Origin: Octopus bimaculoides
Lineage: Eukaryota
Length of the DNA stretch: 64,000 bases
NCBI RefSeq assembly: GCF_001194135.2
Contig: NC_068998.1
Location: forward strand, 54,682,528-54,746,527
Direction of reading: 5' to 3'
Below the pieces are notes generated by a model. It was not told the origin of the DNA, did no database searches, and saw nothing but the letters and a program-made list of their open reading frames with translations. Positions 6,766 through 51,997 of this stretch are shown piece by piece (position 1 is the stretch's first letter; each line of letters opens with the position of its first letter). Both the position numbers and the translations under genes were made by a program.

Positions 6766-7158
6766 NNNNNNNNNNNNNNNNNNNNNNNNNNNNNNNNNNN
6801 NNNNNNNNNNNNNNNNNNNNNNNNNNNNNNNNNNNNNNNNNNNNNNNNNNNNNNNNNNNNNNNNNNNNNNNNNNNNNNNNNNNNNNNNNNNNNNNNNNNN
6901 NNNNNNNNNNNNNNNNNNNNNNNNNNNNNNNNNNNNNNNNNNNNNNNNNNNNNNNNNNNNNNNNNNNNNNNNNNNNNNNNNNNNNNNNNNNNNNNNNNNN
7001 NNNNNNNNNNNNNNNNNNNNNNNNNNNNNNNNNNNNNNNNNNNNNNNNNNNNNNNNNNNNNNNNNNNNNNNNNNNNNNNNNNNNNNNNNNNNNNNNNNNN
7101 NNNNNNNNNNNNNNNNNNNNNNNNNNNNNNNNNNNNNNNNNNNNNNNNNNNNNNNNNN

Positions 7159-7190
<32 letters not shown>

Positions 7191-21468: not shown

Positions 21469-21507
<39 letters not shown>

Positions 21508-21529
21508 CACTACTACCACTACCACCAAC

Positions 21530-21579
<50 letters not shown>

Positions 21580-22263: not shown

Positions 22264-22333
<70 letters not shown>

Positions 22334-27961: not shown

Positions 27962-28003
<42 letters not shown>

Positions 28004-32732: not shown

Positions 32733-32765
<33 letters not shown>

Positions 32766-33056
32766 GTACAAACAAACACGTATGCACATATAAATATATT
32801 TGTAGAAAATCTAAAATAATCGATCTTCAGATTTCCTGATAATTTGGTTATTTAGACTCGACTGGTATATCTTCTTGCAGTCATCTGCCAGAAATTGCTT
32901 CAGTATTTTAAGATGGCATTTACTCTGTCTATCCGTGATATTTTTAATTAAAATATTTCAAAAACATTCTCTTCTTCAGATCTTATCTCCCATAGCAACA
33001 AATTAAGCCTGTTAAAAGGTAATGCAAATAAATGTTGAATCGAGGATATCTGGTTT

Positions 33057-33089
<33 letters not shown>

Positions 33090-33468
33090 TTTTTCTTTAC
33101 CTTTTTTTTTTCTGTATTTCTTTCCTGCCAATTAGGTGGATAACAGCAAAGGAGCTAGTTATTATGTACCTTCGATGTTTCATCTACCACGAGATAACAA
33201 GAAGCTTCATCCAGGAAATTCAGATGTTGTCACCTTTTATTTAAATTTTCATGGATTCCTTCCAGGTAATTAACACAAATATCTTCATTTCCACCACCAT
33301 CGTCACCATCACCATTATCACTACTGTCATCAACATCATCACAGCCACCACCACCACCACTACCATCATCATCACCACCACCATTATCAGTAACACCTCC
33401 ACCACATTCCACTCTTGTCTAATTTTTCTGTGATGAAAACATTGTAATTGCCAGTATACAATTTTATT

Positions 33469-33505
<37 letters not shown>

Positions 33506-35666: not shown

Positions 35667-35720
<54 letters not shown>

Positions 35721-36005
35721 GTTTCAAATTTTGGCCCAAAGCCAGCAATTNNNNNNNNNNGGGGGGGGGGGGTAAATTGCTTACATCAACCCCAGTACTC
35801 AACTGATCCTTATTTTATAAACCTTGAAAGGATGAAAGGCAAAGTTGACCTTGGTGGAATTTCAACACAGGACATAAAGGTGGACAAAATGCCACTAAGC
35901 ATTTTTCCCAGCGTCCTATGGTTCTGCCAGCTCATCACCTTAATAATAATACTAATAGTAGTAGTAGTAGTAGTAGCAGCGCAACGTAACCAACCAAATA
36001 TCTAC

Positions 36006-36041
<36 letters not shown>

Positions 36042-39000
36042 GTGGCGAGCTGGCGGAAATGTTAGCACGTTGGGCAAAATGCTTAGCAGTATTTTGTCTG
36101 TCTTTATGTTCTGAGTTCAAATTCCACCAAGGTTGACTTTGCCTTTCATCCTTTCAGGGTCAATAAATTAAGTACCAGTTGTGTACTGGGTCGATCTAAT
36201 TGACTACCCCCCCATCCCCCCAAACTTTCAGGCTTTGTGCCTAGAGTAGAAAAGAGTGTATGTGTGTGTCCGTCCGTCCGTCCGTCCATGCAGTACAGTA
36301 ATGGAGATATCAATGATAAAGCAGTAATGCTGTAACATGCGAATAAACACTTCAGTTAATAAATTAGCTGCTTTCAGTTCGAGAGAGAGAACAAAATTAA
36401 CACCCTCATGCCGTTGAACATTTAAGTTAATTAAGTAAAAGATCTTAATTATTTGCTCCTACTATCAAAAAAAGATCTACTGTTCTAACGAGAATGCCTA
36501 GCTTCAATATTTAGTCACCATGTTTATATAAACCTCAAATACTGTTTTATTTTCAGCTTCAATTAATCTTGGAATTCTATTAGATTATTCTCTGAAGAAA
36601 AGTTATTGAACTTATCCGAGAACTCGGTTAAAACGTTGATAAAATATCTTTTATTTTCCGAATACTAAAATATAATAATGATAAAATGATTTCAAAGCTA
36701 GGAATTAGCCTGGATAAATTCCACCTAAATTCCTCTCATCTCTGTAACTGTATGACTTCTCTGACATGTTGGTGTTATTTCTAAGTCTTCACCTGGGTTT
36801 ATTTATTAGCAATTACTACTGTCTCCAGGTGTTCTATCCTATCAAAGGATTTGGAAATTTGTAAAATTAATTATGTAACTCGTACAGATTTCAGTAGTTT
36901 CATACCATTATCTGTTATGATTGATAGACAAGAAGAAAACCCACTTCTTATTGTATTGTTTGCTGTAATCTGTTTGTTTGCAGGTTGTTGTGATGCGTGT
37001 TGCAGAAGCCAGAGAAGAGGATGTTTATATTAGTGACAATGGACAGAAAGCTCCTCTTGTAACGAGCCCCCAAGCAGTGGCTAAGGTATTCATTTGTGTT
37101 GATAATATTCTCCTGTCAAAGCGAACCGAAGCTTACAAATCTGATCTTGATCACTGAGATGATTCAGGGACTGTGGATTCAAAGTGAAGATGGTTTTTAG
37201 AAATAGCCAACCAAATTATTAATTCAGTTCTATTATTTTGAATAGGGGTGTGGGGTGGAGAGAAGGGTGTAATTAAGACTTACCTTAGTTTAGTTTTAAT
37301 CATCATCATCATCATTTAATGTCCACTTTTCCTTGCTTGCAAGTGTAGACAGAATTTTTCTATGACTGGATGCCCTTCCTGTCACCAATCCTTGCCTGTA
37401 TCCTAGTGAAGTAATATTTCCCTGTGGTTAGATGTGATGTCAAGACAAGGGTACACATAAATACACAGACACACAAGCGCAACAAGATAAAAGATTCTTT
37501 CAGTTTCCATCTAGCCAACAGAGTCTTTGATTGATCTGGAGGTGTGGTAGAAGACATTTGACCAAGGTGCCATGGAGTGGGACTGAACCCAAAACCATAT
37601 GGCTGGGAAGGAAGCTTCTTAACCACACAGCCATGCTTGTGTCTCTTAATAATGCAGCTGAACTAAAAAAAAAAGGAAAACAGAGAGCATTGAAGACAAA
37701 ATTCAGTTTAGTTTAAATAATATTGAAAATTGGCTTTGAGCCAGAAAAGGGTCACAAATCTGGGGCTTATCTGAATTTCTGAGATGTTTAGTGACTGGAA
37801 ATACAAGACTTGCCCCTGGGCAGAACACCAGTACATTACAGGGTTAATGCACTGGTGTAAAGAGTAATGAAGTGCCTTGCTCAAGGACAGAATGTACCAC
37901 TCTATTCAAGAATTGAACCCTCAACCTGACAATCGTGTCCACTAAGCCATGCACCTTCACTTAAATAATGCAGTCAAGTGTCTTCCATTAATTTCCAAAA
38001 TTAATCCAAAGCATTGAAGAGTGTTTTTCTTTCTTTCTTTCGTTTGTTCGTTTGTCAATAGAATATTGTCTCACGAAAGGATTGCTTTTTTTATTTAAAA
38101 AATTTTTTAAATTAAGGGTTAAAAAAAGCCATTTTATATTTCAACAGGTACGTAATTTTTTGGACACAACACTTCTTCGACTGCGGGAAGTATGGATGAA
38201 ACGTATCTCCTACAGCACCAGTGTCAGTTGTCCGTGTGGCCAGTTATGTGATTTTCATCATATCAGTGGTTGTACGGCTGAGACTTGTCTTCATTTTCTC
38301 GATCTTGATGAATGTCTTAGCAAAAAGGTTAGTCTCCCTCACTCATTCCATGTTCATGGCACCCCACCCTTCCTTTTTTAACATTTTCTTGTCTGTTTTT
38401 TTTTTTTACATTTTTCTCTCCATCTACTGGTCTCAATCATTGGACTGTGACCATTCTGAGACAACATTTTCATTGGTCTTAATCATGGTTGTGTTGTTAA
38501 GAAACTTGCACTGTGTGAGACCTTGGGCAAGTGCTTTGTTTATATCCCCTTAACTTAGCTGCTTGACAAAAGTGACTGATAGTATAAGTACCAGACTGTG
38601 GTTGATTTGTTTGACTAATCCTTTCAAGGTGACACCTTCATCAGCCAAACTCTGTTGTGTTGTACGTGGTCTGTGGAATGCTGTCACCAACCCTCACCTG
38701 TTTTTCATCAAAATAATATTTTCCCTTTATCCTTTGAACACAAACAGCACCTGAGTAGGAAATGTTTTTAATGGTAGAATGCTTGTATCATGGTGATGTT
38801 GTTTACGATTATCATGGGACATCAAAACAAGACATGAACACATGCTCACATATAATAGGCTTCTTTTAGTTTCCCTCTCCCGAATCCTCTTTGGTTGGCC
38901 TGGGGTTTTAGAGAAGGTATTTGCCCAAGGTGCTGCACTGTGGGACTGAATCCAGGACCCTGGGATTGCAAAGCAAACTTCTTATCTGTGTGCTACATAA

Positions 39001-42000
39001 GCACACTAACCCCCATGTCAGTGCCTTAAAGAAACAAATATCTAAGTCTGAATATTTCTTTTGTGGATCTAAACACACATCCTCAGAATGTCCTGCATTT
39101 GGTCAAACATGTATTAAATGTGTGGAGTGGGGGGAAGAATCATTTTGAGGACAATATATAATTTAAGGAAATGGTTGAGGGAATTGAAGAAATTGAAAAT
39201 GAAGATTCTGCAAGTATTTGTGAAATTGGAATAAAAAATATAGAATGATGATTACGAAACTCAATAATGTTAACATTAAAGTGCCAGCCACATTGACAGC
39301 CAAGCAACTGCAATAGCTGAGAATTCCTGGATGGATTTGAATAAAGCAAAATTAAGAAAATGGGATTTCCAACTAAAACAAATTGATGGATCAGTCTTTG
39401 AGATTCTGGGAGAGTTTGATGCATTAATGGTAATTGGCAAGGAGAATAGAGAGAGATTGTGAGTGTCATTGTTGTAGAATGAAAAAAATAATAATAGCTT
39501 ATTGATCTGAACATGAAGAATGAATGTTGATTGTTCAACATTAATTCTTGAGATTGAAACCCCAAGATGATTTGAGAGATTAAGAGGTTTCATGGCTAAC
39601 ATCCTTCTCAAAGGTAATATGAAACCATGCTATTTTGAGGCAAAAACCATTATCAATACATGTTAAAGTAAGGAAATTAATTAATAAAAGATTTTAAGTT
39701 CTTCCTAGAAAGAATAAACGGATCCCTGATTTAATTAGTGGATAAAGAGATCTCAGAATATGAGGGATCTATAAATTAGGTGTAATGGAAAGAATTTGTT
39801 CAGGATCTTATCCATTCCCTAAATACTGGATTGAGTTTCGTTGTTTTCAAGTGAAGAATTATTTTGCCAAAATGGATTTAAAGGAAGCACATCAACAAAT
39901 TGAAATGTATTTTCAAGTAAGAGATGTTACACACCTATAAATACACCTAAGATTGTTTTTAAGGTGAACATGTTTCCAATATGGAATTAAAACAGGAAGT
40001 GCTACATTTTAGAGGGTCATAGAACATATTGTTGGAACATGGATAATTTCGTCTGTCTTTGTGTTCTGAGTTCAAATTCTACCAAGATTGATCTTTACCT
40101 TTCATTCTTTCAGGGTTGATAAAATAAGTACCAGTTATGTACTGGGGTTGATGTAATTAACTTACCCCTCTTCCCTGAAACTGACGGCCTTGTACCAAAA
40201 TTTGAATCCATTATTTATCAAGATTCTGTACAATCATAAAAAGTTGAAATTCTCAGGCCTGATGATCAAATGAGTTGGATCTGTGTTAGAAATTGGTGAA
40301 TTGTCTTTCCTTGGATAGAGTCTGACAGATGAAGATATATATCACCAGATTATCATTTAGCTGCAAGAATTATAGACATGAAAACTGACAAACGACAAGA
40401 AGCTATTAGAATCTTTTCTTAGACTTGTTAATATCTATGGAAGATTTAATGACCATTATTCAGATCACATATCACCGCTTAGAATCACTTTGTAAAACTG
40501 GTCTCCTGGTTTTTTGAAGAATCCTTCAACAAAACTCAACTAAGCAGATAAAAACTGCTGAAATCGTTATAGCTATTGGTTCAGATTTATAATATCACAA
40601 AAGAAGTTACGTCGAAAGTTGATGCAAATGAAAAAGCTATAACACAAGAAAAACTACCTTGTATTATGTTTGTCAACAACATTAACCACATCTAAAACAA
40701 GATATTCAAATATTGAGAAGAGGAAACCTGGGCAAATGTGTTCTGTATTCAAAGAGAATAGTATTTTCTGCCTGGCTGAAGATTTAAATTGTTCTCAGAT
40801 CATAAGAGTAAGTCTCACAAGAATATATATTTTTAACAAGCATTGTAGTTTATCAAAAGTGCTGTCTGCTTGGAATATGAGATGGGGTTCTCGAATAATA
40901 GGGTTTGGTTGTGAAATATCTTTGTAACAGGATCTCAGATATCATGTATTGATCTATTATCGCAATTGCAGGAATTAATTATGGTGGTGGAGGTGGGTTT
41001 TATCAATCTTTTATAAATTGATGGATTAAAATGTAGAAATATAACATTGAAAACTACCAATATTTTATTTAAAAGGACTTTTAATAATTATTTTTCCGTT
41101 TTAGAAAAGTTGTTTAATTCATTGAAAAAAAAAAATTAACAAAGCACAGGCTTGGCTGTGTGGTTAAGAAGCTTGTTTGGCAACCACATGGTTTCAGGTT
41201 CAGTCCCTCTGTGCAGCACATTGGGTATGTTTTCTACTATAGCCCTGACCAATGCTTTGTGAGTGAATTTGATAGATGCTTCTACTCCGTTTATCTCTAC
41301 TAAATTTTATTCATCAACGTTTGGTTGGTTTAAGGCTTTAGTAGAAGACACTCAGTTGGTCTCATACAACTGGGATTGAACTTGAAAGGATGGAGCTGCA
41401 AAGCGAACCACTTTACCAAGCAGCCATACTTGTAGCCGACATTTATTCTGGAGCAGACAAAGTGCAGTGGGTTGAATTATATGTATCTAATTCAACGGCT
41501 GAAGGAGATTTTGATCTTGTGATACTGTCATCAATTGTCCAGCAATGTTAACAGTATAATCATTTTGAATGTGAAGAGAAACTAGTTTAGACTGCTTTGA
41601 GAAAGCTTTCTCACAAATAATTGACAACAAAGGGTGAATAAATACAGACATAATAAGTATAATCGGTGTCTGAAAATCAACAGCATATTTACTTGAAAGA
41701 CCATTATAGCAAGACTTCAAGAGATCTTGTTTTGTTTTCAATGACAAAGAAAGAAAGAAAAATGTAAAAAGAAATGGAATTCTGGTCGACTTCAATGTGA
41801 AGATTCTTTGGCCAAGTTTAACCAGGAGAGACACTACTTATAATTTGCAGGAAACAACTTGAAGACAAATGGTAAATTATACATTTCAATGGAGAACATC
41901 ATTAAAACTATTTAGTAAACTATGTATAAAAGACATTTTCAATAAGGACACCTGTAATACTAGACACAAACAATTATCTCGCCTACTAACCCCTCCCCCC

Positions 42001-45000
42001 TGCCTCTGATATCAATAATTTAGGGAAGGCTTACATTTCATTTTGATAGATATCCTCTAATAGCTGAAATCTCTCTTTGTTTCTCTTCACCTCAACAATT
42101 TTACCTTTTTATTTCCATTTTACAGAATTCTTTCCTTTTTTTTTTATTGCAGTCTTTTACATTTCTCTGACTCTTCTTGTCTATTTGGCTCTTTTTTTTT
42201 AATTTCTTTTTCTTTTTTTTTTGGCTTAAGCAAATTCTATAGGGCTGGTCATTTTGTGTTGCTGCCCCCTCTGTATTCCCCACAAATGCTGTTGGTCAAG
42301 TGCTTCCTATTTCCCATGAGTAGGAAGCTGTTTTATGCACCACCTGCATCGGTTTCATTGCAGATGCAGTCATGGAAGCCATGTGCACGGAAAGCAATTA
42401 AATGTTTCAGTGAACCAACATCAATCTAGAAGGAATATGTCAATGATCCTTTTGTAAGAATGTAGGAATTCCACAGAGTTTGTTTGTTGTGGTTACAAAA
42501 ATGTTCAACAGCGTGGAATCTAATTTTGCATCAGAGACAATTACCAAAGACTGACCCACTCTCCTAGACACATCAATTAATATAACTAGTGACAACGTGA
42601 TTACTATAATTGCTGTACTAATAATCATGTAGTTATCTAAAAACCATTGTAATATTAGCCGTGGTGGAGCTCGGCTGAAAATATTTATATACACAGAACA
42701 CCTACATAGAGATAATAGTATTTACCTCAACTGTGGGACGTACAAAAAACCCACACAATATTTATTTCACCATCATCATCATTTTACTTCAGTTTTCTTT
42801 GCTGGTATGGGTTGGATAGGTTACTGCAGTGTCTGAGTCGGTTCTTATTTAGAATTACTGCTTTCCCAGATGGGTCAGAGGGGAAACACCTTTATCTTTC
42901 ATCTTTCTCTTGGTTTTTATGCCTCAATGCCCTTCTGGTCACCATCCACTTTATAAAACGTACTGGGTGCATTTTATTGTGGCTATTGACAGTAGAGAGG
43001 ATGCTATATTCTTATTGAAATATATAGAGAAAAACATCGACACACAGGGAAATAGTAATTTATCTCAGCACTTAAATATATTGAAAAACCTACAAAAAGA
43101 GAAGAGTATTTATCTCACTGCTAAAATATAGAGAAAAAAACCCTTTAAGATAATAGTATTTATCTTACCAGTAAAATATACAGAAAACCTGCATATAAAT
43201 ATCTTTACACTGAAATTTTCTTTAGAGGTTGAAAACTTGGAATAATTTCAACATTTATGTATAGAATAAGAGAAAGTATTTATCTAAAAGAAAAAAAAAG
43301 AAAAAAGGAAGTAAAATAAATAATAGAAAATGAATGAGAGATGTGAATATCAAAAGTCTACGTTTGTTAAAGAGTCTTTTTATAGAGAAATAAAATAAAA
43401 TATCAACAAAAAGTCACATGAAGTTTCTGGAGGGAGTTAATTGTTAACTTGGATGATTTTTTTCATGGTGTGAAACAGATGGTGAGAGATAATTCCCCTG
43501 TTGGTAACATTCTCAACTGATGATGGCCATAACAGCTGAACTGGGATAATGTTGAGTAAAATGTCCCACTCACAAATAAAATGAACTTCTTGAGACAGAT
43601 TTGAACTTGTCACCTTTACACATACACTTTGTTAAATTGTCTCTTATTTTTTTTTATTACTTTTTCCTTAAACAGGTTATTTGTTGTGGCCATCGCCGGA
43701 TGAAAACAACATTCGTTCAAAAATGGTTCCCTCCCCACCACACAGTTGGTGAGTGCTTTTTTTTTCTCATGTTTCTGAGTAAAAAATGCCTTAATTGTTT
43801 ATATTATTTGCTTGTTAGAGTGAAACACAATTAACTATATTGGTAGACTTAAATGTTTTATACTTTAACTAAGATGGGAAGGTATGGGCCCTTAAATAAG
43901 GACCAAATGGGGAGAGGTGCAGCATCTACCTTATACATCAAAATCAGCAACTCAGTTTTTGAATCCATAAGGAACAGACACACTACACACACACATACAT
44001 GCACAAACTCTGTTATATATTTANNNNNNNNNNTATATATATAAAGAGAGAGAGAGAGAGAGAGAGCAGCTATATCTTGAAATAAACCATTTTCATTACA
44101 CAAAGCTGTTAGATTCAGTTTCAATTTGAAGTGAATTTAAGAACTTTGGCTGTTGTTGCACATCTCTTGTACAATGTTGTTGCTTCAGTTTCACCACACA
44201 GTCTCACACCAAACCATTTTCTAGACTTGTACAACTCCAAGGTGTGTGAATGCATTTCAAATGGGGTCCTTCTTGACCCTCTGATTGGCCTCTCAGAAGC
44301 TGCGATACATAAACAGGTACCTACCATGAGAATTAGGGTACAGTTTTTATAACAGTTTGAGAGGTACCTTCCATGGATGAAGATAGTGTCAGTATAAATG
44401 TAAGGTGGTATCTTTTTGTGTGTGTGTGTCCATGTCAGTTAACCAGTGTCATGATTATAGAGTGCTCTCTTATGTCTCATCACATAGCAATTAGACAAAT
44501 AGAGATTGATGAGATGATTGCCAAACTGAAATATGTACTGTGATCCATACAATCCACTAAAACTTTCCTAAATGGTGCTCCTGTATGGCCACAGTCACTG
44601 ACCAAAACCAGTGAAGCACTAAAGTAATTACACCCAATAATTAGCTTCATATTGGTAATTGCTGTAAGCTTTATTAATTGTAATTATTATTTTGTTTGTT
44701 TGTTTTTTTTATTGTAAAAGCCTTGAAGAAGACAATCCTTTCCAACAGTTTATTAGAATCGACAAAAGGTAACTTTGAGAAAGAAATAACAGATTTGCCT
44801 TATTGGATCAAAAGTGCTGCCAAGTTATTAAATAATGGAGTGGAAAACCTAGACTGGGTCTGTTTAGCCAATTATTTGGGTAAGAACACAAGAGAAAATT
44901 ATTATTGTTGTTGGATGTGTCTGATACTTGGAGAAAAATTTGATTTCTTCTGCTCTGTAATCGATTGCCTAACTTCAGTTTGCTACATGTTCACTACCAC

Positions 45001-46718
45001 ATGGTTACTTGTGAGTAGATTTGGTAATCAGAAATTGACTGAAGCCTGCCATGTATATATATCGGTGTGTGTGTCCTTGTTTTGGTTTTACATGTTTGTT
45101 GTAAATGAATGTCATTCATTTCCAATCTTCTGCAAAAGCATGTCTGACCATGAATCTAGCATCCCCACCCAGCTCAAAACAATATCTGTTTATCGTGATT
45201 TCTGGGTTATTTCCCATCATCAGCACAGAATAATTGTTCGGCTAGAGGTGGTGCTGCCAAATTCCCATTCGAAATATATAGTTTTCAAAGTGACAACAAG
45301 TCACTGATCTATAAATTAGAAAATTACTATTTTTAAATCTCACAACGAGAGATATTAGCAACAGTACTTTGGAGTAAAGATTGTTTGCCTTGTTTGAAAA
45401 TATAAGGACACAGATCGTGTCGTATAACCAGCTGGAGACGATGTCTCCTGGGGCTAAATTACAGCAACATTCGTCCTAAACCAGGACTGCCATGTTATGT
45501 TGGCAAACAATCTTTACTACAAAGTATTGTTGCTGAATATCTCTTGTTGTGAGATGTACAAATAGTAATTTTCTAACAGTGAATGTCGTTTTTATGGGTT
45601 TAAATATTCCTCAAGCATCTTTGAATTGGTAACGAATTTGTATTTGTACCTGTTACTGATTAGTGCAGTCACCCTGTATTATATAATTAGTATTGTAATT
45701 GAACATTTTATATTAAGTGTAAAAAAAAAAATGCTCTTAAATTCACAGTCTCCTAAATTTGTTGTCAATTCAGGTTATAAGAAACCGAAAATCGATAAAT
45801 TTAATAATGATTTAAATCCATCACTTGCTCTGCTCACTGACTGGATTCTTGGCAGCGGCAACACACAGGTGTCTGTGGATGTATTGCACACTTTCTTGGA
45901 GAAAATGTCCAGGTATGACATCATAGATCTTCTGAAACAAAGCAGAGGTAAGTACAAAAAAAAAAAAGATAAAGAAGATAAAATTTTTAAAATAAGTAAA
46001 TAAAATGTAAATAAATAAAGGTATTGTTTTGATAATGTGATAATATATTTAATTAAATCTTTCAAAGTAGCAGATTAGCAAAATCATGTCAGGACCTTTA
46101 GATTAAATGCATTTATTTGATTAGGCTCTGTGTATACTTTGGAAGCAGCAGTAGTAGTAGTAGTAGTAGTAGTGGTAGTTTACTGTTCTTCTCTTACCCC
46201 TCCCCCCTTCTGATGAGGTCAATTGTCTAAAAAAATTATAATTATATTAACGATTGCTAATTTCTGTCATTTAGATAATTTACAATAGCAAATGTGTTTT
46301 GCTTTTCCAGAACAATCCCACTGCCCACAAGTGTTTATCAGTTACCAGTGGGACAGTCAAGATGCAGTGAAGGCCCTGTGGGACAGGCTGGAAAGAGCCG
46401 GAATCTCTTGTTGGATGGACATTGGCCAGATGGGTGGTGGTGACCAGCTCTATAACAAGATTGAACAAGGAATTCGGAATTGCAAGGTGAGACACATCTA
46501 CTTGGCATTTTGAATTGTGTGTATGTTGCGGGGAGGCCAATATCCATAACGTACCTCTCCTCCAAATTTCAAGACTTCAGCTTTTGTTAGAAACAATTAT
46601 TTGGGGCAGACGACTGGATAATGCTTTGGCAGGATTCCTGGAGCAGCAGATGAAATGCCTTCTGCTATATAAACAGCATTTGTTCATCCTTTCGGGGTCG
46701 ATAAATTATAGTGGAAGG

Positions 46719-46774
<56 letters not shown>

Positions 46775-48251
46775 CATCATTATTACTAACAAATTCCATC
46801 TGACCCATGCAAGTATGGAAAAGTGAACGTTAAAAGCAGACATTAAATGATGATGATGATGATAATGATGTTCCTGGTGGAGTGGAATTGGTAAGTTTTG
46901 AAAGAGATTTACTTAGAAGTGGAGAGTCAAGTGCAAAGCAATCTTTGCATGGAGATGCTTCCAGAACGATCATGTTTGAGAAGTGGGAAAATGGACGATT
47001 CTGTTTTGTTGCTAACGAAGAATCTAACTTTGATTGCTTTGAAATTGAATTCAGTTTAATTCTTTTAAGTTGTAATTAATAATCTTTCGTTATTAATTGA
47101 TAATTTCATAATTGTGCTTAATCTGAAATGTTCTTTGATATCTTCTTTATATTCCGTTTGCTTCCATGGCTCTTTTAATGATGTTCTACTCATATGTGTT
47201 ATGGATGCAAGCACTTAGCTTATGCCACAACCATTTGTGTAATTTATCTTCGTTAATAAATGTGTTCAACTTGACGACTCATTTAATTGTCAAACTCCAT
47301 ATTCCTTGACTTTTTGAGTCTTGTCTTCTTTTTACCTTTTATCTTTTACTTGTTTCAGTCATTGGGCTGTGGCTATGCTGGAGCACCACCTTGAAGGGTT
47401 TCTTTTAAAGCCTGGTACTTATTCTGTTGCTCTCTTTTGTCAAAACTCTAAGTTACAGAACGTAAACAAACCAACACCAGTAGTGGGGGAACAACAACAA
47501 CAAAGAGACATACACAAAACACACATATATATATGAAAGGCTTCTTTCAGTTTCCATGAACCAAATTCACTCTTGAGGCATTGGGTAATCCTGGGCTATA
47601 ATAGAAGACATTTGCCCCAAGTACTACACAGTGGGACTGAACCTAAAACCGCATGGTTACTAAGTAAGCTTTTTAACCACATAATAGATTTCGTTAATAA
47701 TAATTTTACATCCAGTTTTCCTTGCAAGCCATCAGATGCAACTTGTGCATTATGTGAAAATAGTGCACTATGTTGCACTAATGATTATCTCACTTCTTAA
47801 ATAAACTAATATTGACCAATAACTTACATTGTTTCAATGTCCTCTCCGTCGTTGCATAATTATCTAAGAGTGACAATATTCTCTCCTCTGCCTTTCATTC
47901 TTTTAGAATTAATTCCTGGAATCAATTTAATAATCCTATAAAGCATTTCTTACATCTCAACATAATTTTAATTAGAAGACTAACTATTGTTTTTTCAAGC
48001 AGATGGCTTCCCTGAGTAACTTGACAGTACAGTCTGCTATTTTGCTCCCAAGACACTATCTTCGAATTCTGCTCTCAGTGAACTCTTTACAAGATATACC
48101 AATATTTACTGTTTATTTTATTCCATTGGGTTTTTTTTTTTCATAAAGTAAATATATTTGCTTCTTGCAAGTCTCTTTGTTTTTTGTTTTTGTTTTTCTT
48201 TCATTGTTAACCAGTGACCTTTGGTGTCTTGGTGTTGTATAAGTAGCAGAA

Positions 48252-48289
<38 letters not shown>

Positions 48290-51200
48290 CCATGCCAGCA
48301 TGGTAAATGTGTGTGAAATGCTGGTGGTGCACGTGTGTGTGTGTGTACACACATGACCCATACCAGCATGGAAAGCTGACATTAAATGCTGGTTTTATAT
48401 ATATATATATGTATATATATATATTGTAAATAGGTGCATCTCAGAACTGATTTTATATCTATAAAGATAAACTTTGACATTCAGCAGAAAATATCTTTTC
48501 GAGTTTAACTCTCACTTGCTATAAAAAAAACAACAATTCCAGAAAATACACACAAATACAAGAACTTCACCAATTTCTCTGCTAAGCAGTCACAAGAGGT
48601 TACCTTCCTCCAAAACATTTCCAAAAGCACATGCAGATATTTGAAATGAAGACACCCACAATCCAACTGAAGACGAAAGAAAAGTGAAGGTCATGGTTAG
48701 AATAGCTTTAGCCCTAGGTCTGCTCAATCTGGGTAGAGTTGGTGAAAAATGACAATCACAATCCAGTTACTCTTTCAAGAAATTCTGATCTTCCATATTA
48801 TTTACACCTGAAAAATTTTGTGTTTTTCTATTTGCATACTCTAAGGCATTATTAAAATAATAGTCTTAAATATTTGTGTGTGTGTGTGTGTGTGTGACTG
48901 GAATAAAACCAAAAAAGAAAAACCTAAATAGTAAGTTTTCCATGTTCAGAATCTGATTAGTTTAATGCAGCTACTTCTATTGAACAGATTTTAATGGATG
49001 CTCTTCCTCCTCCTCCTCCTCCGTTATCTCATTCATACACTTCTTCGTTCTCTTTCCTTCTCCTGATTACTTTAATCCGTGCTGTTCAACGAAGATTGTA
49101 TAACAATAGCATATTAACCTTCCCCCCCCCCCATTTGTTATTATCACATTGTCTTCTCGTCACAACCTTCTCTCATGGAAAAAGAAATAAAAATTAAAAA
49201 ATTGATTCGTTTCTATTGGAATCGTTTACTGGGTTCTAGCTGAACACAAATCATCGTTCTATTATATTCCCATCCAGCTCATTATATCGACAGCATTGCT
49301 TTCTTGTCTTTGTGTGTGTTGCTTCCTTTTGTAGACCATGTTACGTTACTGAAAAATATCAAACGTCTGAAGCATGCCTCACACAACCTGCCGCCATTTA
49401 CTTCTGATATCATTAGAGACAAGCATCATACGCAAACGCCTTGCCACTTTCCTAGCAAATCTCAGACCCTGTGCCAATGTAACAAATTGATATTTGTGGA
49501 ATTCAATGAGTTTCCTTCATCAAAAGAACTTTCACTATAGTTTCTTCCCTTCTGCTAAAATTCAATAGAAATCTCCAATGTCCGTTGTGTCAGTCTTTAT
49601 ATCACTGTGTCACTTCTTTCATTTCTCATACGGCTCTTCACAATAGTTATTTACTTTGGTACGACACACATTTAAAGACAACCAATACAAACTGTTCAAT
49701 TGTTCTCAAGACATTTCAGTAATTTCTTTATCAAAATCCCTCAACAGTTGAAATACAAAGTCAACAAAAGTGGGATTTCAACCACAAATTGAAGCTAAAT
49801 TTACTCCACTATTCTGTAATGATGATGATGATGATGATGGTTACAGTTTTTACTTCTTCGTTGCTCTCATAATAGAGATATTTCTCTTTTATATATATAA
49901 AAAAATTGTGTTCCCCTCCCCCCTCCTGCAATTGACCCCAAATAGTTTTCCCTTTTGTTTTTTCTGTCTCTGCCAACAATTATTAATTTTACTGTTTATT
50001 TCAGTTTTTCATCATTTTTTTTCTTAAATACCACATTCCTCTTACCTTCTCTGCCACTTCCTCCTCCTTCCCTCTATGCTTTCCTCTCACCCCCCCCCCA
50101 CTATCCCCATGTCACTACACTCCCATCCTTGCTCACCTCTACACACTTCCCATCTTACATTGATACCCTGCACACACCACTTCACCCCTTCCTATCCCCC
50201 TTCATAGAACCATATACCCATCTGGCCCCAAATCCCTTCTTTCTCCAACTCCCTTTTCTCATTTTATTTTATTTTTTCAACCACTTTTCCTCTTTTTATT
50301 TTTATTTTCACTTTTTCTTCTGATGAGGGACTTGTGTCCAAAATATCAAGACTCTTTCCCTTTTTTTTTAAGCATTAAACTAATACATTTGTTAAAACTT
50401 GTCCATCCTGTGTTGTCTTCGATTTTTTGTGCTCACTGCTGCCTTCTGCATTCATACAACCCACCTGCAATTACTGAGACCAAGTTATTTGTTCGTTAAG
50501 AGAGGACATTACTTTTTTAAGGCCAATACTCTCTCTTCCCAGTGATTTGCAGAAGATTTATACAGGACTCACCTCAAATGTCTTTAAAAGACATTATAAA
50601 CAGGTTTGTTTTATGAGTCTATGAACCTCTCTAAGTCGCATGGAGCCAGGTCAAACTGCTATCAAATATATTATGTGTGTGTGTGTTTTAAGTGGCTGTC
50701 ATGACTTTCTTCTCTCATTTCATTTTAGATTATATTGGCCTGCGTTACACCCAAGTATGTCATATCTCATCTCTGCAACCGCGAACTGAGCTTAGCTGAT
50801 GGTCTGCGGAAACCTATCCTCCCTGTGATGTTTGAAAGTATCGTCTGGCCTCCACCGGGTGGCATGGCACTCATCTTTTCCAACCTTGTATATATTGACA
50901 TGAATGGTTAGTTTAATTATCAATTAGTATGGTTTATAATTTGGTGGCGGTGGTGGGGGAGTGAAAAACGAAATGCTGGGCTCAGTCAAAGTCAAGTGAC
51001 CCACTTTAGATGCATCTAAAGTAGAAGCCAATGAAAGAGGATGATGTTTAGCTCTCTCCCTCTATGTCTTAATGCAAATACATTGTGGAAAGGCAAATTA
51101 ATTGCAGCATTTGTTAGGATGTCATATCTTTTACGGACACGCTCTTTATAAAAACAAATCTATATCAGTAGTAGACAAAACATGTCCGGCAGTGGCAGTG

Positions 51201-51997
51201 AGAATGGTAAATGTGCATTCCTGCCTGTTTTGGATTTGGTTAGTCGGATGTACCAACTGTTGACCACAAGCTAAGACAAAATCTGACATCACTGATATAA
51301 AAAAAAAACAGGGATTAAAAAATCACTGATGTTGCATTTAACCACTCAGCCAAACAAAAGTGGCAAACATCGATGTACAGAATTTTAGTGACATTTTTGT
51401 GATATTGTCTCTACATCTGGAACAACCTGTTGTTGATGGAACTCCATATCTATCTTGTGCAGCATAAACTGATCAGTTGAGAAGAACAGGCCTACTGTTC
51501 AATCACTGATTGATTCTGAAATTCATTGATTGTCATTGATGAAAGTATAGGGCTCAGAGCATTTGTTAAACTTGTTTCTTGGTTAATCTGACCCAAACTA
51601 TCTTATCTTTTAACTTACCAATAATCTTCATCATTTTGCAGGTATTGGGGGACACGGAAGCTCAGGAATGACTGCTGACTTGGCGGATAAATATAAGGAG
51701 ATTATCCACCGAATTTCACATTATTTTATTAACGATGAGAATAGTAAAAGTACAACAGAATCCAAATCATTTGTTCCCAGTTCTGTAAAATCCAATCAAA
51801 CTAGTAATGAAGTTAACGAAGTCACTCCATCTATAGAAACAACACATGAGGAACATCATGTAGGTTCATTGAATCCTCACCAAGAAATGAATGAACAATT
51901 GACCATACATAACAGCAACCATCCAAGAACTCTATCCAGAACTAATGTGGCTAGGACGACATCTCGTTGGAGATGTGGTCTATGTAATGTATTATAA
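3911..51997 (+). CDS. Multi-exon gene model: NHR-Roc-COR-Death-TIR(-CaaX) ROCO protein, about 1234 aa visible, 20 exons
   Basis: All 20 exons have canonical AG/GT ends and matching phases; summed length 3705 nt = 1235 codons including stop. In-frame TGA at 3899-3901 upstream of ATG 3911. The only weak junction is exon 5 to exon 6, where an exon is probably missing. Confidence 0.9.
6721..7188. repeat. (CT)n microsatellite flanking N-gap 6766-7158
   Basis: Direct reading of the sequence. Confidence 0.95.
8354..8700 (-). mobile_element. tRNA-derived SINE family C, near full length
   Basis: Reverse complement of the family C head (A/B boxes, ggttcagtyccactg, ccttgggcaagt-like core) and its tail ending atgactgaaacaagtaaaaga. 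Confidence 0.8.
8813..8975 (+). CDS. Exon 2: Roc G1/P-loop
   Basis: TTTTAG|ATG...CAAAA|GTAAGA. With phase 1 it reads DDTPKEIFVRGEAAIKAYEKACCSGSEAVYRTRLMLVGKDRVGKTSLKRSLLGQ (GxxxxGKT). The ORF track shows another frame. Confidence 0.93.
9384..9456. repeat. 20-bp minisatellite, about 3.7 copies
   Basis: Unit ttcttacctgctccaatacc starts at 9384, 9404, 9424 and 9444. Confidence 0.95.
11408..11745 (+). mobile_element. tRNA-derived SINE family C
   Basis: gggttcagttccactgcatggcattttgggtaagcgtcttccactatagcc...atgactgaaacaaatgaaag. Other partial copies: 19303-19368(+), 19505-19765(-), 24130-24310(-), 28530-28670(-), 37480-37640(-), 41147-41275(+), 41325-41435(-), 47325-47680(-), 56815-57040(+), 58548-58760(+). 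Confidence 0.8.
11757..11845. repeat. 32-bp minisatellite, about 2.8 copies
   Basis: Unit tttacttaccttrtttyattaatctaccttaa starts at 11757, 11789 and 11821. Confidence 0.92.
12511..12680 (-). mobile_element. RTE-tail element (family A), 3' end
   Basis: (CAT)n-cgtttaatgtccattttccatgctggcatgggttgg is the reverse complement of the family A tail. Confidence 0.8.
15331..15716 (+). mobile_element. RTE-tail element (family A) with internal subrepeats
   Basis: Repeated ggtggcacataaaaagcacc / gactggc blocks, then ttggcgttaggaaggg...aacccatgccagcatggaaagcggatattaaacg(ATG)n. Other copies: 14853-14952(+), 18083-18352(+), 31651-31830(-), 52906-53178(+), 55006-55175(-). Confidence 0.85.
16282..16436 (+). 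CDS. Exon 3: Roc switch I (G2) and start of insertion
   Basis: TTACAG|A...ATTG|GTAAAT, phase 2 to 1. Reads KDDQPLESTDGVDLSESCSFNTSDSKAWRL...; STDGVD is the Roc switch-I type motif. Confidence 0.9.
16553..16679. mobile_element. 127-bp Tc1/mariner-type MITE
   Basis: 29-bp TIRs CAGGGTGGCCACAAGGTCTGGGTGCATGG / CCATGTACCCAGACTTTGTGGACACCCTG (3 mismatches), flanked by TA at 16551-52 and 16680-81. Confidence 0.85.
19124..19251 (+). CDS. Exon 4: Roc insertion
   Basis: CTCTCAG|GT...AAA|GTAAGT, phase 1 to 0. Reads GGVAALEEEFTDSTALNVYLEMVLHQKEKELKNKNNFQKNDKK. Confidence 0.85.
20185..20755 (-). mobile_element. RTE LINE 3' end (ORF C-terminus, 3'UTR, (GAT)n tail)
   Basis: Minus strand: HMDKDICVKKCRSLTVERTCGRGRPRKTWNEVVKHDLRTLGL, a typical RTE C-terminus, followed by the family A tail. 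Confidence 0.88.
21164..21448 (+). CDS. Exon 5: insertion end and Roc G3
   Basis: CCCACAG|ACA...CAG|GTAGGA, phase 0 to 0. Ends VTLDIWDFAGQAVYYTTHQ, the classic Roc WDFAGQxxYYxTH motif. Confidence 0.95.
21471..22332. repeat. (TAC)n and (GT)n microsatellites flanking N-gap 21580-22263
   Basis: Direct reading of the sequence. Confidence 0.95.
23303..23448. repeat. 35-bp minisatellite, about 4.2 copies
   Basis: Unit tgtgttggcaacatttggtyaatgagttgatggtt. Confidence 0.95.
23500..23760. mobile_element. Palindromic MITE-like element
   Basis: Outer inverted ends aatatgcttgaggcac / gtgtctcaagcatatt; inner 49-bp inverted repeat 23575-23623 vs 23676-23724 (46/49). Confidence 0.75.
25380..25700 (+). mobile_element. 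tRNA-derived SINE family D
   Basis: Head gaaggcacatggctcagtgg...gagttcaattccc...gtgtccttgagcaagac. Related heads at about 32300-32530(+) and 37860-37960(-). Confidence 0.65.
25810..25995 (+). CDS. Exon 6 (visible): Roc G4 region
   Basis: EDQTVENMSNLGYIDYWMKSIHAHS...SPPMFIVGTHRNSL...KQM|GTAAGT. The acceptor is uncertain: AAG at 25807-25809 (phase 0) or TAG at 25785-25787 (phase 2). Confidence 0.82.
26544..26758 (+). mobile_element. tRNA-derived SINE family B, full length
   Basis: A-box tggcagagtgg, B-box gagttcaaattc, core gttgactttgcctttcatcctttc..ggtcgataaattaagtaccag. Other copies: 13465-13645(-), 16712-16900(-), 25225-25322(-), 35200-35380(-), 35719-35937(-), 36044-36255(+), 40050-40212(+). 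Confidence 0.85.
27143..27262 (+). CDS. Exon 7: Roc G5 region
   Basis: TTGCAG|GTG...CAG|GTTTGA, phase 0. Reads VKEKFNALEEFLIGKPYYKHIIKPFFAVENYGSEDEEDVQ. Confidence 0.9.
27725..27868 (+). CDS. Exon 8: Roc end / COR start
   Basis: TTTTAG|ATT...CAG|GTAGGT. Reads ICLLREHIQKVALQEPYMGEKIPTRWLQFEDII... (COR IPxxWL motif). Absent from the ORF track. Confidence 0.92.
29852..30061 (+). CDS. Exon 9: COR-A
   Basis: CTCAG|GTG...CAA|GTAAGT. Reads ...MLDFYHDLGVIIYYGG...LVILNLQWLVEMFRRVIT (COR FxHDLGxIxY and VIxxxxWL motifs). Confidence 0.93.
31471..31629 (+). CDS. Exon 10: COR-A
   Basis: TTACAG|GAT...AAG|GTAGGA. Reads ...LEKYGLLDEQLINYLW...LLGLLQKFDLICKRIPSK. Confidence 0.92.
32575..32790. repeat. Compound (TA)/(TG) microsatellite
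   Basis: Direct reading; it produces the spurious YI/HT-rich ORFs. Confidence 0.95.
33136..33265 (+). CDS. Exon 11: COR-A/B junction
   Basis: ATTAG|GTG...CCAG|GTAATT, phase 0 to 1. Reads VDNSKGASYYVPSMF...FYLNFHGFLP. Confidence 0.9.
34909..35066 (+). CDS. Exon 12: COR-B
   Basis: TTTTCAG|AA...AAG|GTAACA, phase 1 to 0. Reads EALFHRILAHTLHWSQECGGSEPYLYYRVARLFLDSEHDFILEMLPSSYAKVK and continues the FLP-E-xLFHR motif. Confidence 0.9.
36984..37085 (+). CDS. Exon 13: COR-B
   Basis: TTGCAG|GTT...AAG|GTATTC, phase 0 to 0. Reads VVVMRVAEAREEDVYISDNGQKAPLVTSPQAVAK. Confidence 0.83.
38148..38327 (+). CDS. Exon 14: COR-B end and Cys/His cluster
   Basis: CAACAG|GTA...AAG|GTTAGT. Reads VRNFLDTTLLRLREVWMKRISYSTSVSCPCGQLCDFHHISGCTAETCLHFLDLDECLSKK. 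Confidence 0.9.
39050..40970 (+). mobile_element. Decayed Ty3/Gypsy gag-pol remnant (intron 14)
   Basis: Motifs in order, broken by stops and frameshifts: Zn-knuckle CGSKHTSSECPAFGQTCIKC (about 39060), RT YFAKMDLKEAHQQIE (about 39860), INTPK, YGIKTGSATF*RV, YQDS (40216), RNase H TTSKTRYSNIEK (about 40690), DLLSQL (about 40955). Confidence 0.8.
43676..43748 (+). CDS. Exon 15: end of Cys/His cluster
   Basis: AAACAG|GTT...GTTG|GTGAGT, phase 0 to 1. Reads VICCGHRRMKTTFVQKWFPPHHTV. Confidence 0.88.
44721..44879 (+). CDS. Exon 16: linker and Death domain N-half
   Basis: T-rich tract, GTAAAAG|CC...TTGG|GTAAGA, phase 1 to 1. Reads ...LPYWIKSAAKLLNNGVENLDWVCLANYL (DWxxLAxxLG death-fold motif). Confidence 0.88.
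45774..45947 (+). CDS. Exon 17: Death domain C-half
   Basis: ATTCAG|GT...AGAG|GTAAGT, phase 1 to 1. Reads GYKKPKIDKF...PSLALLTDW...SVDVLHTFLEKMSRYDIIDLL (LLxxW and LxxxxRxD death-fold pattern). Confidence 0.9.
46311..46486 (+). CDS. Exon 18: TIR domain N-half
   Basis: TTCCAG|AA...AAG|GTGAGA, phase 1 to 0. Reads QVFISYQWDSQDAVKALWDRLERAGISCWMDIGQMGGGDQLYNKIEQGIRNCK (TIR_2 VFISY and WxD..GG motifs). Confidence 0.95.
50020..50440 (+). mobile_element. Penelope-like element remnant with decayed hammerhead motif
   Basis: Long pyrimidine-rich tract followed by tcttCTGATGAgggacttgtgtccAAAATATCaaga, matching the minimal type I hammerhead layout described for PLE pseudo-LTRs. Confidence 0.5.
50729..50906 (+). 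CDS. Exon 19: TIR domain C-half with conserved Glu
   Basis: TTTTAG|ATT...AATG|GTTAGT, phase 0 to 1. Reads IILACVTPKYVISHLCNRELSLADGLRKPILPVMFESIVWPPPGGMALIFSNLVYIDMN. Absent from the ORF track. Confidence 0.95.
51642..51997 (+). CDS. Exon 20: TIR end, low-complexity linker, CaaX terminus
   Basis: TTGCAG|GT, phase 1. Reads GIGGHGSSGMTADLADKYKEIIHRI...RTTSRWRCGLCNVL* with TAA at 51995-51997. Confidence 0.9.

What the first reader, a model, noticed from the sequence alone, without database searches (positions are those of the whole stretch)
46311..50906. TIR is TIR_2-type and keeps the NADase catalytic glutamate (GAA 50783-50785)
Seen: VFISY...WMDIGQMGGG...TPKYVISHLCNRE. Known: enzymatic TIRs (SARM1 E642, plant NLR TIRs, bacterial Thoeris ThsB) use a Glu at this SxWCxxE-equivalent position, whereas TLR/MyD88 adaptor TIRs are non-enzymatic. 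Inference: this TIR may cleave NAD+ or make cADPR-type messengers when Roc-COR/Death oligomerise.
Basis: partly seen in the sequence, partly recalled or inferred. Interest (0 to 1): 0.75.

Follow-up and report, generated by a model that had tools for sequence, protein, structure and literature searches.

The report
SARM1-like TIR in octopus ROCO gene
The last exons of an uncharacterised octopus gene encode a TIR domain that keeps the glutamate enzymatic TIRs use to cleave NAD+, so it probably is an enzyme, but nobody has tested it and this glutamate is now known to be common in animal TIRs.

Summary
Window 46311-46486, 50729-50906 and 51642-~51730 (+) are exons 18-20 of Octopus bimaculoides LOC106875913 (1264 aa). 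They encode a Pfam TIR_2 domain (E=4.5e-25). GAA 50783-50785 is Glu1106 in the motif S-H-L-C-N-R-E, on predicted helix alphaC.

Profile alignments place this Glu on SARM1 E642, AbTir E208, BdTIR E127 and TLR4 E750. The closest solved fold is the human SARM1 TIR. The Glu is invariant in 54 orthologs and is the fifth most conserved of 146 columns across 275 related TIR domains. SARM1 Y568, D594 and G601 are also matched; W638 is not.

The protein is Neuralized(NHR)-Roc-COR-Death-TIR with a flexible tail. It ends in a C-a-a-L prenylation box, present in 53 of 54 orthologs. Orthologs occur from molluscs to amphioxus.

Catalysis remains inferred. A 2026 preprint reports that most non-TLR animal TIRs keep this Glu, yet only 12 of 61 tested made cADPR in E. 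coli. This family was not tested. Of the 16 tested TIRs most similar to it, 9 were active, but not the three closest.

Verdict: a real feature, a new member of a known kind, moderately interesting.

The parts
3911..51997 (+). Whole coding region of Octopus bimaculoides LOC106875913 (20 exons, 1264 aa): NHR-Roc-COR-Death-TIR-tail-CaaL
   Evidence: tblastn of P0101 gives 100% identity in every exon. The exact GT-AG model reproduces P0101.
3911..4379 (+). Exon 1: start codon and Neuralized homology repeat (NHR), aa 1-156
   Evidence: Pfam Neuralized PF07177 E=1.2e-36. Matches Drosophila Neuralized NHR1 structures 2yue/4kg0 at E~1e-29 for the Haliotis ortholog.
8813..27262 (+). Exons 2-7: Roc GTPase domain. 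P-loop GKDRVGKTS is in exon 2 and DxxG 'DFAGQ' is in exon 5. A long insert lies between G2 and G3.
   Evidence: Pfam Roc PF08477; ortholog alignment. One conserved Roc exon is missing from the assembly (see the 25720-25809 part).
25720..25809 (+). Probably spurious 5' extension of exon 6 in the RefSeq model (aa 401-430, VTLNELPLF...). It replaces the conserved Roc segment 'FLSSRAxYVIVFN...'.
   Evidence: All orthologs carry the conserved segment. It is not found anywhere in the window by tblastn. The N gap 21580-22263 lies between exons 5 and 6. A better acceptor exists at 25810.
27725..38327 (+). Exons 8-14: COR-A and COR-B
   Evidence: Pfam COR-A PF16095 E=5.9e-18. COR-B was detected in the Saccoglossus ortholog. 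PDB matches to Chlorobium Roco and LRRK1/2.
44721..45947 (+). Exons 16-17: Death domain (aa ~958-1026)
   Evidence: Pfam Death PF00531 E=1.8e-7. The nearest solved Death domains are p75NTR and NRADD.
46311..46486 (+). Exon 18: TIR strand betaA (VFISY) through helix alphaB, including the BB-loop WMDIGQMGGGD (46412-46444)
50729..50906 (+). Exon 19: TIR betaC-alphaC-betaD-alphaD-betaE, including SHLCNRE and WPPPGG
50783..50785 (+). GAA codon = Glu1106, the putative catalytic glutamate on helix alphaC
   Evidence: Read directly from the sequence. Aligned to SARM1 E642, AbTir E208 and BdTIR E127/TLR4 E750. Invariant in orthologs. Fifth most conserved of 146 columns in 275 related TIR domains.
51642..51730 (+). 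Start of exon 20: family-specific GGHG(G/S) loop (51647-51658) and TIR helix alphaE
   Evidence: Splice phase matches exon 19. GGHGG is invariant in orthologs. AlphaFold puts a helix at residues 125-144 of the domain.
51731..51982 (+). Variable, low-complexity C-terminal tail (about 85 aa), a presumed flexible tether
   Evidence: Aligns poorly among orthologs
51974..51997 (+). C-terminal CGLCNVL plus stop: a CaaX box with X=Leu (geranylgeranylation signal) and a second upstream Cys
   Evidence: 53 of 54 full-length orthologs end in C-a-a-L with a second Cys 2-3 residues upstream

Best explanation
The region holds the last three exons of a conserved bilaterian gene that encodes a lipid-anchored ROCO-type switch protein. 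The domain order is Neuralized repeat, Roc GTPase, COR, Death domain, TIR_2 domain, flexible tail and a C-a-a-L prenylation box.

Shown: the TIR belongs to the SARM1, bacterial and plant type. It keeps the alphaC glutamate (Glu1106), the beta-A Tyr, the BB-loop Asp and the BB-loop Gly that SARM1 needs for activity.

Inferred mechanism: the protein sits on a membrane through its geranylgeranyl tail. A ligand bound by the NHR domain, or a change in the nucleotide state of Roc-COR, drives self-association through COR and the Death domain. This packs the TIR domains head-to-tail, so a composite active site forms around Glu1106. NAD+ is then cleaved or cyclised to ADPR or a cADPR-type product. The product acts either as a signal or as a way to deplete NAD+ in immunity or cell death.

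The membrane anchoring, the trigger, the oligomerisation and the chemistry are all inferred.
For: - Gene model and identity.
- Domain order.
- TIR_2 at E=4.5e-25.
- The Glu aligns with SARM1 E642 (hhalign probability 95.6%).
- The Glu also aligns with AbTir E208, and with BdTIR E127, TLR4 E750, Patiria E327 and P. nicotianae E892.
- The same alignment matches SARM1 Y568, D594 and G601 to the invariant Y12, D37 and G44 of the domain. Mutating these SARM1 residues lowers activity (PMC8266388).
- The AlphaFold model (pLDDT 84.7) puts the Glu on helix alphaC.
- The best fold match in the PDB is human SARM1 TIR (E=1e-6, TM 0.65-0.7), ahead of MyD88, MAL and TLR TIRs.
- The best sequence matches in the PDB are NADase TIRs: BtTir/AbTir, Cat1, PdTIR and SARM1.
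- The Glu is invariant in 54 orthologs. It ranks fifth of 146 columns in 275 TIR domains from the 144 nearest cluster representatives, 92% Glu.
- Of the 16 experimentally tested TIRs that score best against this family's profile, 9 made cADPR or depleted NAD+. Examples are Clupea A0A6P8EVF3 and Latimeria H2ZXV5.
- The CaaL box is present in 53 of 54 orthologs.
Against: - There is no biochemical data for this protein or any ortholog. Its signature motifs are absent from the complete list of 154 TIRs tested in the preprint.
- In that screen only 12 of 61 Glu-bearing animal TIRs were active.
- The three tested TIRs closest to this family were not active: B. lanceolatum A0A8J9W3M3, Chlamydomonas A0A2K3E7X5 and Phallusia.
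- TLR2 has the Glu and was inactive.
- Among orthologs the whole domain is very conserved, with 34 of 147 columns invariant. Invariance of the Glu there says little by itself.
- The aromatic residue four positions before the Glu (SARM1 W638, AbTir W204) is Leu here and is variable in the family.
- The Death-TIR order is that of the adaptor MyD88.
- The residue-level structural superposition was not available. Only the fold ranking and sequence or profile alignments were.
Confidence: 0.55

Rival explanations
1. The TIR is a non-enzymatic assembly domain. The C-terminal Death-TIR pair works like MyD88: it recruits TIR receptors or adaptors and death-fold kinases or caspases at the membrane. The Glu would be retained for structural or binding reasons.
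For: - The Death-TIR order is the same as in MyD88. The Aplysia ortholog was catalogued as a MyD88-like protein with a ROCO domain (PMC9334734).
- The BB-loop and other surface loops are invariant, as expected for an interaction surface.
- Most Glu-bearing animal TIRs were inactive in the E. coli screen.
- A predicted membrane anchor places the domain where TLR TIRs sit.
Against: - MyD88 has Phe at the catalytic position (preprint Table S2).
- MyD88 does not appear among the sequence matches at E<=1 and ranks behind SARM1, SPARTA, plant and bacterial TIRs in the fold search.
- The family profile scores TLR4 at 15 bits and TLR2 at 7 bits, against 53-89 bits for the clade that contains active TIR enzymes.
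- The Glu is among the five most constrained positions of the wider clade.
- The two roles are not exclusive. SARM1 is regarded as both enzyme and adaptor.
Confidence: 0.25
2. The TIR is catalytic, but NAD+ hydrolysis or cADPR synthesis is not its relevant reaction. Alternatives are base exchange on NADP, a ribose-ribose linked cADPR isomer, nucleic-acid-derived 2',3'-cNMP synthesis as reported for some plant TIRs, or hydrolysis of cADPR.
For: - Product spectra differ widely among Glu-bearing TIRs. The preprint reports cADPR, 2'cADPR, 3'cADPR, or NAD+ depletion with no cyclic product.
- The Trp that influences product choice in AbTir is absent (own knowledge of AbTir W204; alignment).
- An invariant family-specific GGHGG loop lies just before alphaE. 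It may reshape the pocket.
- A TIR-fold cADPR hydrolase has been described in Drosophila (PMC13455253 abstract).
Against: Nothing here points to a specific alternative substrate. The nearest active relatives in the preprint gave canonical cADPR or NAD+ depletion.
Confidence: 0.1
3. The domain is catalytically and functionally inert in octopus. The Glu is simply inherited with a slowly evolving domain.
For: The whole domain is 54-91% identical across phyla, so one more invariant residue carries little information.
Against: Such strong purifying selection on the entire domain, its loops and the C-terminal lipidation box over bilaterian evolution argues for function. Full-length transcripts from other cephalopods encode the same architecture (P0103 and P0104, transcript-sized contigs).
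Confidence: 0.05

Closest known systems
SARM1 TIR domain (human SARM1, Drosophila dSarm, C. elegans TIR-1): NAD+ hydrolase/cyclase
   Same: Both are Pfam TIR_2. SARM1 TIR is the best fold match in the PDB. The Glu aligns with E642, and Y568, D594 and G601 are also matched. The two share a 'W-P-x-P' motif after betaD.
   Different: Profile score is only 28 bits. This domain lacks the SARM1-specific loop before alphaC and lacks the W638 equivalent. The context differs: ARM-SAM-SAM-TIR, with an octamer formed by the SAM domains, against NHR-Roc-COR-Death-TIR-CaaL.
Clade of 'SYxW...WMD...SxxCxxE' TIRs tested by Hurieva et al. 2026 (e.g. Clupea A0A6P8EVF3, Latimeria H2ZXV5, C. gigas A0A8W8J0Z4, Patiria A0A914B4U3, P. 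nicotianae D0N4Z2)
   Same: These are the highest-scoring tested TIRs against the family profile, at 53-89 bits. They share the same motifs around the Glu. Nine of the best 16 made cADPR or depleted NAD+ in a Glu-dependent way.
   Different: They sit in other architectures (TIR-only, TPR-TIR, others). They lack the GGHGG loop, and most lack WPPPGG. The three closest were inactive in that assay. This family itself was not tested.
MyD88 (Death-TIR adaptor)
   Same: A Death domain is followed directly by a TIR. The Aplysia ortholog has been listed as MyD88-like.
   Different: The TIR subtype differs. MyD88 has Phe at the catalytic position. MyD88 has no NHR, no Roc-COR and no prenylation box.
ROCO proteins with a Death domain: DAPK1 (own knowledge); sea-anemone 'NG3' kinase-SH3-Roc-COR-Death-TIR (PMC5094078)
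   Same: They share the Roc-COR-Death core. NG3 also ends in a TIR. The same paper notes a 'neuralized' variant of this architecture in Strigamia and Crassostrea gigas.
   Different: This protein has an N-terminal NHR instead of kinase and ankyrin or SH3 domains. DAPK1 has no TIR. No member of this group has been tested for TIR catalysis.
Plant TIR-only and TNL TIRs (BdTIR, L6, RPP1) and bacterial AbTir/Thoeris ThsB
   Same: The core motif S-x-x-C-x-R-E-L is nearly that of BdTIR (SEYCLRELA). The logic is also the same: an NTPase switch plus an oligomerisation-activated TIR.
   Different: The switch is a Roc-COR GTPase rather than a STAND ATPase. No downstream receptor for a TIR product is known in animals.

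Membership tests
Pfam TIR_2 (PF13676) domain | Score above the curated gathering cut-off over most of the model | tested here: met
   88.9 bits against a cut-off of 28, model positions 1-109 of 122. The full protein gives 83.8 bits.
Catalytic (NAD+-processing) TIR domains | Glutamate on helix alphaC at the position of SARM1 E642 / AbTir E208 / ThsB E85 | tested here: met
   Profile and pairwise alignments. The Glu lies in predicted helix 73-84 of the domain. There was no residue-level 3D superposition.
Catalytic (NAD+-processing) TIR domains | Other residues needed for SARM1 activity: beta-A Tyr (Y568), BB-loop Asp (D594) and Gly (G601) | tested here: met
   Aligned to the invariant Y12, D37 and G44 of the domain. 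Mutational data are in PMC8266388.
Catalytic (NAD+-processing) TIR domains | Aromatic residue four positions before the Glu (SARM1 W638, AbTir W204). This is not universal: BdTIR has Tyr. | tested here: not met
   Leu in octopus; H/L/Y/N/E in orthologs; N or Y in most of the wider clade.
Catalytic (NAD+-processing) TIR domains | Glu-dependent NAD+ consumption or cADPR-isomer production | not testable with these tools
   Needs biochemistry. The family is not among the 154 TIRs of preprint Table S4.
ROCO proteins | Roc GTPase directly followed by a COR domain | tested here: met
   Pfam Roc, COR-A and (in an ortholog) COR-B. PDB matches to bacterial Roco and LRRK1/2.
ROCO proteins | Intact nucleotide-binding motifs (P-loop GxxxxGK[ST], DxxG, and the [NT]KxD-like G4) | tested here: inconclusive
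   The P-loop GKDRVGKTS and DFAGQ are present and conserved. G4 reads GTHRN in octopus and GTHR[D/N]/GTHKN in orthologs. One Roc exon is missing from this assembly.
MyD88 family | Death domain plus a MyD88-type TIR (Box 1 FDAFICY, Box 2 RDVLPG, no catalytic Glu) | tested here: not met
   The Death-TIR order is present, but the TIR is TIR_2 and SARM1-like. MyD88 is absent from the sequence matches. MyD88 has Phe at the Glu position.
CaaX-prenylated proteins | C-terminal Cys-aliphatic-aliphatic-X; X=Leu directs geranylgeranylation | tested here: met
   The protein ends in CNVL. 53 of 54 orthologs end in C-a-a-L. The actual lipid modification is not testable here.

The most novel reading that the evidence does not exclude
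This is an ancient, bilaterian-wide, membrane-anchored GTPase-switched sensor. Its TIR makes an NAD+-derived second messenger when the Roc-COR and Death modules oligomerise. That would be an animal counterpart of plant TNL or bacterial Thoeris logic, built on a ROCO GTPase instead of a STAND ATPase. It was not found in vertebrates, insects or nematodes among the hits, which would explain why it has been overlooked.
Probability: 0.3. Interest if true: 0.8.

Novelty: new member of a known kind. Interest (0 to 1): 0.45.

Why it matters
If the TIR is active, this protein would be a second conserved family of enzymatic TIR proteins in animals beside SARM1. It would couple NAD+ chemistry to a ROCO GTPase switch, a death-fold assembly domain and a lipid anchor. 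That would give a tractable entry point to ask what TIR-derived nucleotides do in animal immunity or cell death. It would also show how ROCO GTPases, the family of LRRK2 and DAPK1, can control an effector other than a kinase. The very high conservation (the TIR is 54% identical between octopus and amphioxus) and its absence from the usual model organisms make it an under-studied gene. Even so, retention of the Glu is no longer surprising in itself.

Tried and rejected
- Bacterial-style ORF listing is uninformative here, because this is an intron-rich animal gene. I moved to exon assembly and homolog-guided mapping.
- A homology search with the TIR alone returned mostly exon-sized fragments. 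A concatenated draft protein found the full-length family.
- I looked for the missing conserved Roc exon elsewhere in the window and did not find it.
- I checked whether the coral relative P0003 has Roc-COR upstream. It does not; it is a TIR-only gene next to a DM9-TIR gene.
- I searched the preprint's tables for the family's motifs and for UniProt accessions of six orthologs and found none. Tables S1 and S2 are truncated in the held copy, so I cannot tell whether the family is in their 16,000-domain survey.
- Literature searches for a named class ('ecTIR-DC', ROCO-TIR) gave nothing usable. Gerdol et al. 2017 is not in the library.
- Rfam and tRNA scans of the window were empty.
- I considered a MyD88 orthology reading and rejected it on TIR subtype.
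- The second structure job (Death-TIR pair) was not run. Coordinates are not returned, so it could not answer the active-site question.


Full report
**What the window is.** The window is intron-rich animal DNA, about 35% G+C, with microsatellites and seven runs of N. A draft protein assembled from + strand exons found a family of roughly 1260-aa proteins. The best hit was P0101, 'uncharacterized protein LOC106875913 [Octopus bimaculoides]'. tblastn of P0101 against the window gives 100% identity in every exon. A 20-exon model with GT-AG introns, spanning 3911..51997 on the + strand, translates exactly to its 1264 residues. The finding covers exons 18 and 19 and the 4.2-kb intron between them. 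Its two end coordinates are exact splice sites.

**Checking the observation.**
- Exon 18 (46311-46486) encodes ...VFISYQWDSQDAVKALWDRLERAGISCWMDIGQMGGGDQLYNKIEQGIRNCK.
- Exon 19 (50729-50906) encodes IILACVTPKYVISHLCNRELSLADGLRKPILPVMFESIVWPPPGGMALIFSNLVYIDMN.
- GAA at 50783-50785 is in frame and encodes Glu1106, the last residue of S-H-L-C-N-R-E.
- The domain is completed by the first ~30 codons of exon 20 (from 51642), which carry a GGHG loop and helix alphaE.
- Pfam calls the domain TIR_2 (PF13676, E=4.5e-25). The classical TIR model reaches only E=1.4e-4.

**Is this the catalytic glutamate?** Three independent kinds of alignment agree.
- phmmer against PDB sequences aligns 'CNRELS' with AbTir 'TNYELD'. 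By the numbering in Table S4 of the Hurieva et al. preprint, that Glu is E208.
- A profile of 30 orthologous TIRs (alignment A1) compared with the SARM1 TIR by hhalign gives probability 95.6% and puts the Glu on the E of 'VHKEIV'.
- The same hhalign alignment pairs the invariant Tyr of FISY with Y568, the Asp of WMD with D594, and the last Gly of MGGGD with G601.
- Mutations of Y568, D594, G601 and E642 all reduce SARM1 activity (PMC8266388).
- hmmsearch with the family profile also aligns the Glu with the annotated catalytic residue of BdTIR, TLR4, and the Patiria, Phytophthora and Dictyostelium TIRs.
- An AlphaFold2 model (mean pLDDT 84.7) has the standard five-strand TIR fold, with the Glu in helix alphaC, residues 73-84 of the domain.
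- Foldseek against the PDB ranks human SARM1 TIR first (6o0u, E=1.1e-6, TM 0.65-0.7). SPARTA, plant NLR, Hydra TRR-2, Cat1 and AbTir TIRs follow. MyD88, MAL and TLR1 come later.
- I could not obtain a residue-by-residue structural superposition.
- One difference from SARM1 and AbTir: the Trp four residues before the Glu (W638, W204) is Leu in octopus and varies among orthologs. BdTIR, which is active, has Tyr there, so this is not disqualifying.

**How strong is the conservation argument?** Among 54 complete orthologs from molluscs, annelids, nemerteans, a flatworm, a priapulid, echinoderms, hemichordates and amphioxus, the Glu never changes. However, the domain as a whole is 54-91% identical to the octopus one, and 34 of 147 columns are invariant. 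On its own this is therefore weak evidence.

A wider test is more informative. A profile search of 1.84 billion cluster representatives found 263 proteins at E<=1e-30. In the 275 TIR domains of the 144 best new ones, the Glu is kept in 92% and is the fifth most conserved of 146 columns. The others at the top are C75, W35, K87, L27, S72, Y12, P91 and D37. That set includes the SxxCxxE motif and the residues matched to SARM1's Tyr and Asp. Many of these relatives are Death-TIR-TIR proteins, so 'Death + this TIR type' is a recurring module.

**The whole protein.** Pfam finds these domains:
- Neuralized/NHR, residues 3-154.
- Roc, with the P-loop near residue 195 and DFAGQ near 385, and a long insert between them.
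- COR-A, residues 555-715.
- Death, residues 958-1026.
- TIR_2, residues 1036-1146.

COR-B is detected in the Saccoglossus ortholog. The nearest solved relatives of each part, for the Haliotis ortholog, are Drosophila Neuralized NHR1, bacterial Roco and LRRK1/2, the p75NTR/NRADD Death domains, and SARM1 TIR.

After the TIR comes a poorly conserved tail, and then the protein ends in ...CGLCNVL. Of 54 orthologs, 53 end in Cys-aliphatic-aliphatic-Leu with a second Cys just upstream. From general knowledge of CaaX processing, this is a geranylgeranylation signal, so the protein is probably membrane-anchored with the TIR on a flexible tether.

**What is known about the family.** The architecture has been noticed in silico. 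It appears in the Aplysia immunome survey (Fig. 6; LOC101861518, filed as a MyD88-like protein with a ROCO domain). A sea-anemone study also mentions a 'neuralized' variant in Strigamia and Crassostrea gigas. I found no functional work.

[quoted passage not shown] It reports the following:
- Beyond TLR and IL-1R clades, most animal TIRs keep the catalytic Glu.
- 12 of 61 tested animal TIRs, including human TLR4, made cADPR in E. coli in a Glu-dependent way.
- MyD88 has Phe at this position.

The family's signature peptides (CWMDIGQ, GGHGG, WPPPG) are absent from the complete table of 154 tested TIRs, so the family has not been tested. I scored the tested TIRs that I read (parts 1, 4 and 5 of the table) against the family profile. 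Nine of the 16 best (53-89 bits) were active, for example herring A0A6P8EVF3 (cADPR) and coelacanth H2ZXV5 (NAD+ depletion). The three closest were not active. SARM1 scores 28 bits, TLR4 15 and TLR2 7.

**Interpretation.** Its inference of an oligomerisation-activated NAD+-processing TIR is the best-supported reading, and I put it at about 0.55. The reasons for this reading:
- The domain is of the enzymatic type by sequence and fold.
- It keeps four of the five SARM1 residues checked.
- It belongs to a clade rich in experimentally active members.
- It sits behind two modules, Roc-COR and Death, that typically self-associate.

It remains unproven, because the Glu is a poor predictor on its own and the closest tested relatives were negative. 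The main rival is a MyD88-like scaffold role (0.25), which is not exclusive of catalysis.

**Novelty and interest.** The gene is already annotated and the architecture has been seen before. Retention of the Glu is now known to be common. This is a new, untested member of a known kind. What makes it worth a bench test is the combination of extreme conservation across Bilateria, absence from vertebrates, insects and nematodes among the hits, and the unusual coupling of NHR, ROCO GTPase, Death, TIR and a prenyl anchor. Interest is about 0.45.

**Side observations.**
- The RefSeq model has a probably spurious 30-residue patch, aa 401-430 (window 25720-25809). It stands in place of a conserved Roc exon that is absent from the window and probably lies in the N gap 21580-22263.
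- A conserved Cys/His-rich element follows COR-B.
- The introns carry SINE-like repeats.
- A reverse-transcriptase fragment lies at 3-371 on the minus strand.
- There are no Rfam or tRNA hits in the window.

Noticed in passing
window 51974-51997 (+): The protein ends in CGLCNVL plus stop, a CaaX box with X=Leu (geranylgeranylation signal) and a second Cys upstream. 53 of 54 orthologs across Bilateria end in C-a-a-L. This implies a membrane-anchored protein with the TIR on a variable tether of about 85 aa.
   Followed up: partly
window 25720-25809 (+) and N gap 21580-22263: RefSeq residues 401-430 (VTLNELPLFLVLCMNLTFSHIYSKSLLFLK) replace the Roc segment 'FLSSRAxYVIVFNxCxDL...' that all orthologs carry. 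That exon is not in the window and probably lies in the assembly gap. A good acceptor at 25810 would be the true start of exon 6.
   Followed up: partly
window 38148-38327 and 43676-43748 (+), protein aa ~860-917: A conserved Cys/His-rich stretch lies between COR-B and the Death domain (CPCG..C..HH...C....C.HFLDLDECL...V..C.HRR.KT...KWFP). It could be a metal-binding element. It is shorter in deuterostome orthologs.
   Followed up: no
window 51647-51658 (+), protein aa 1149-1152: An invariant glycine-rich 'GGHGG' loop lies just before TIR helix alphaE. It is specific to the NHR-ROCO family: His appears in only 26 of 275 related TIR domains. AlphaFold confidence is below 50 there. It lies roughly where SARM1 has H685; this equivalence was not tested.
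   Followed up: partly
proteins P0221, P0223, P0228, P0233: The nearest non-orthologous relatives of this TIR are large Death-TIR-TIR proteins of roughly 770-1500 aa, and multi-TIR proteins with up to 7-8 TIR copies plus WD40 (P0244). 'Death + this TIR subtype' is therefore a reused module.
   Followed up: partly
L001 10001-22629 (Oculina patagonica contig CM126647.1): The coral relative (P0003, 53% identical to the octopus TIR) is a TIR-only gene with no Roc-COR upstream. It sits next to a DM9-TIR_2 gene.
   Followed up: no
window 3-371 (-): An open frame matches reverse transcriptase (RVT_1, E=2.9e-13). It is a retroelement fragment at the edge of the window, upstream of the gene.
   Followed up: partly
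window 15443-15716, 18120-18353, 20185-20371, 52898-53174, 55005-55189; and 16713-16900, 26543-26759, 35190-35379, 35781-35940, 36040-36255, 40046-40219: There are two families of short interspersed repeats (about 120-280 bp, 77-87% identical, both orientations). Most copies are in introns of the gene and some lie downstream of it.
   Followed up: no
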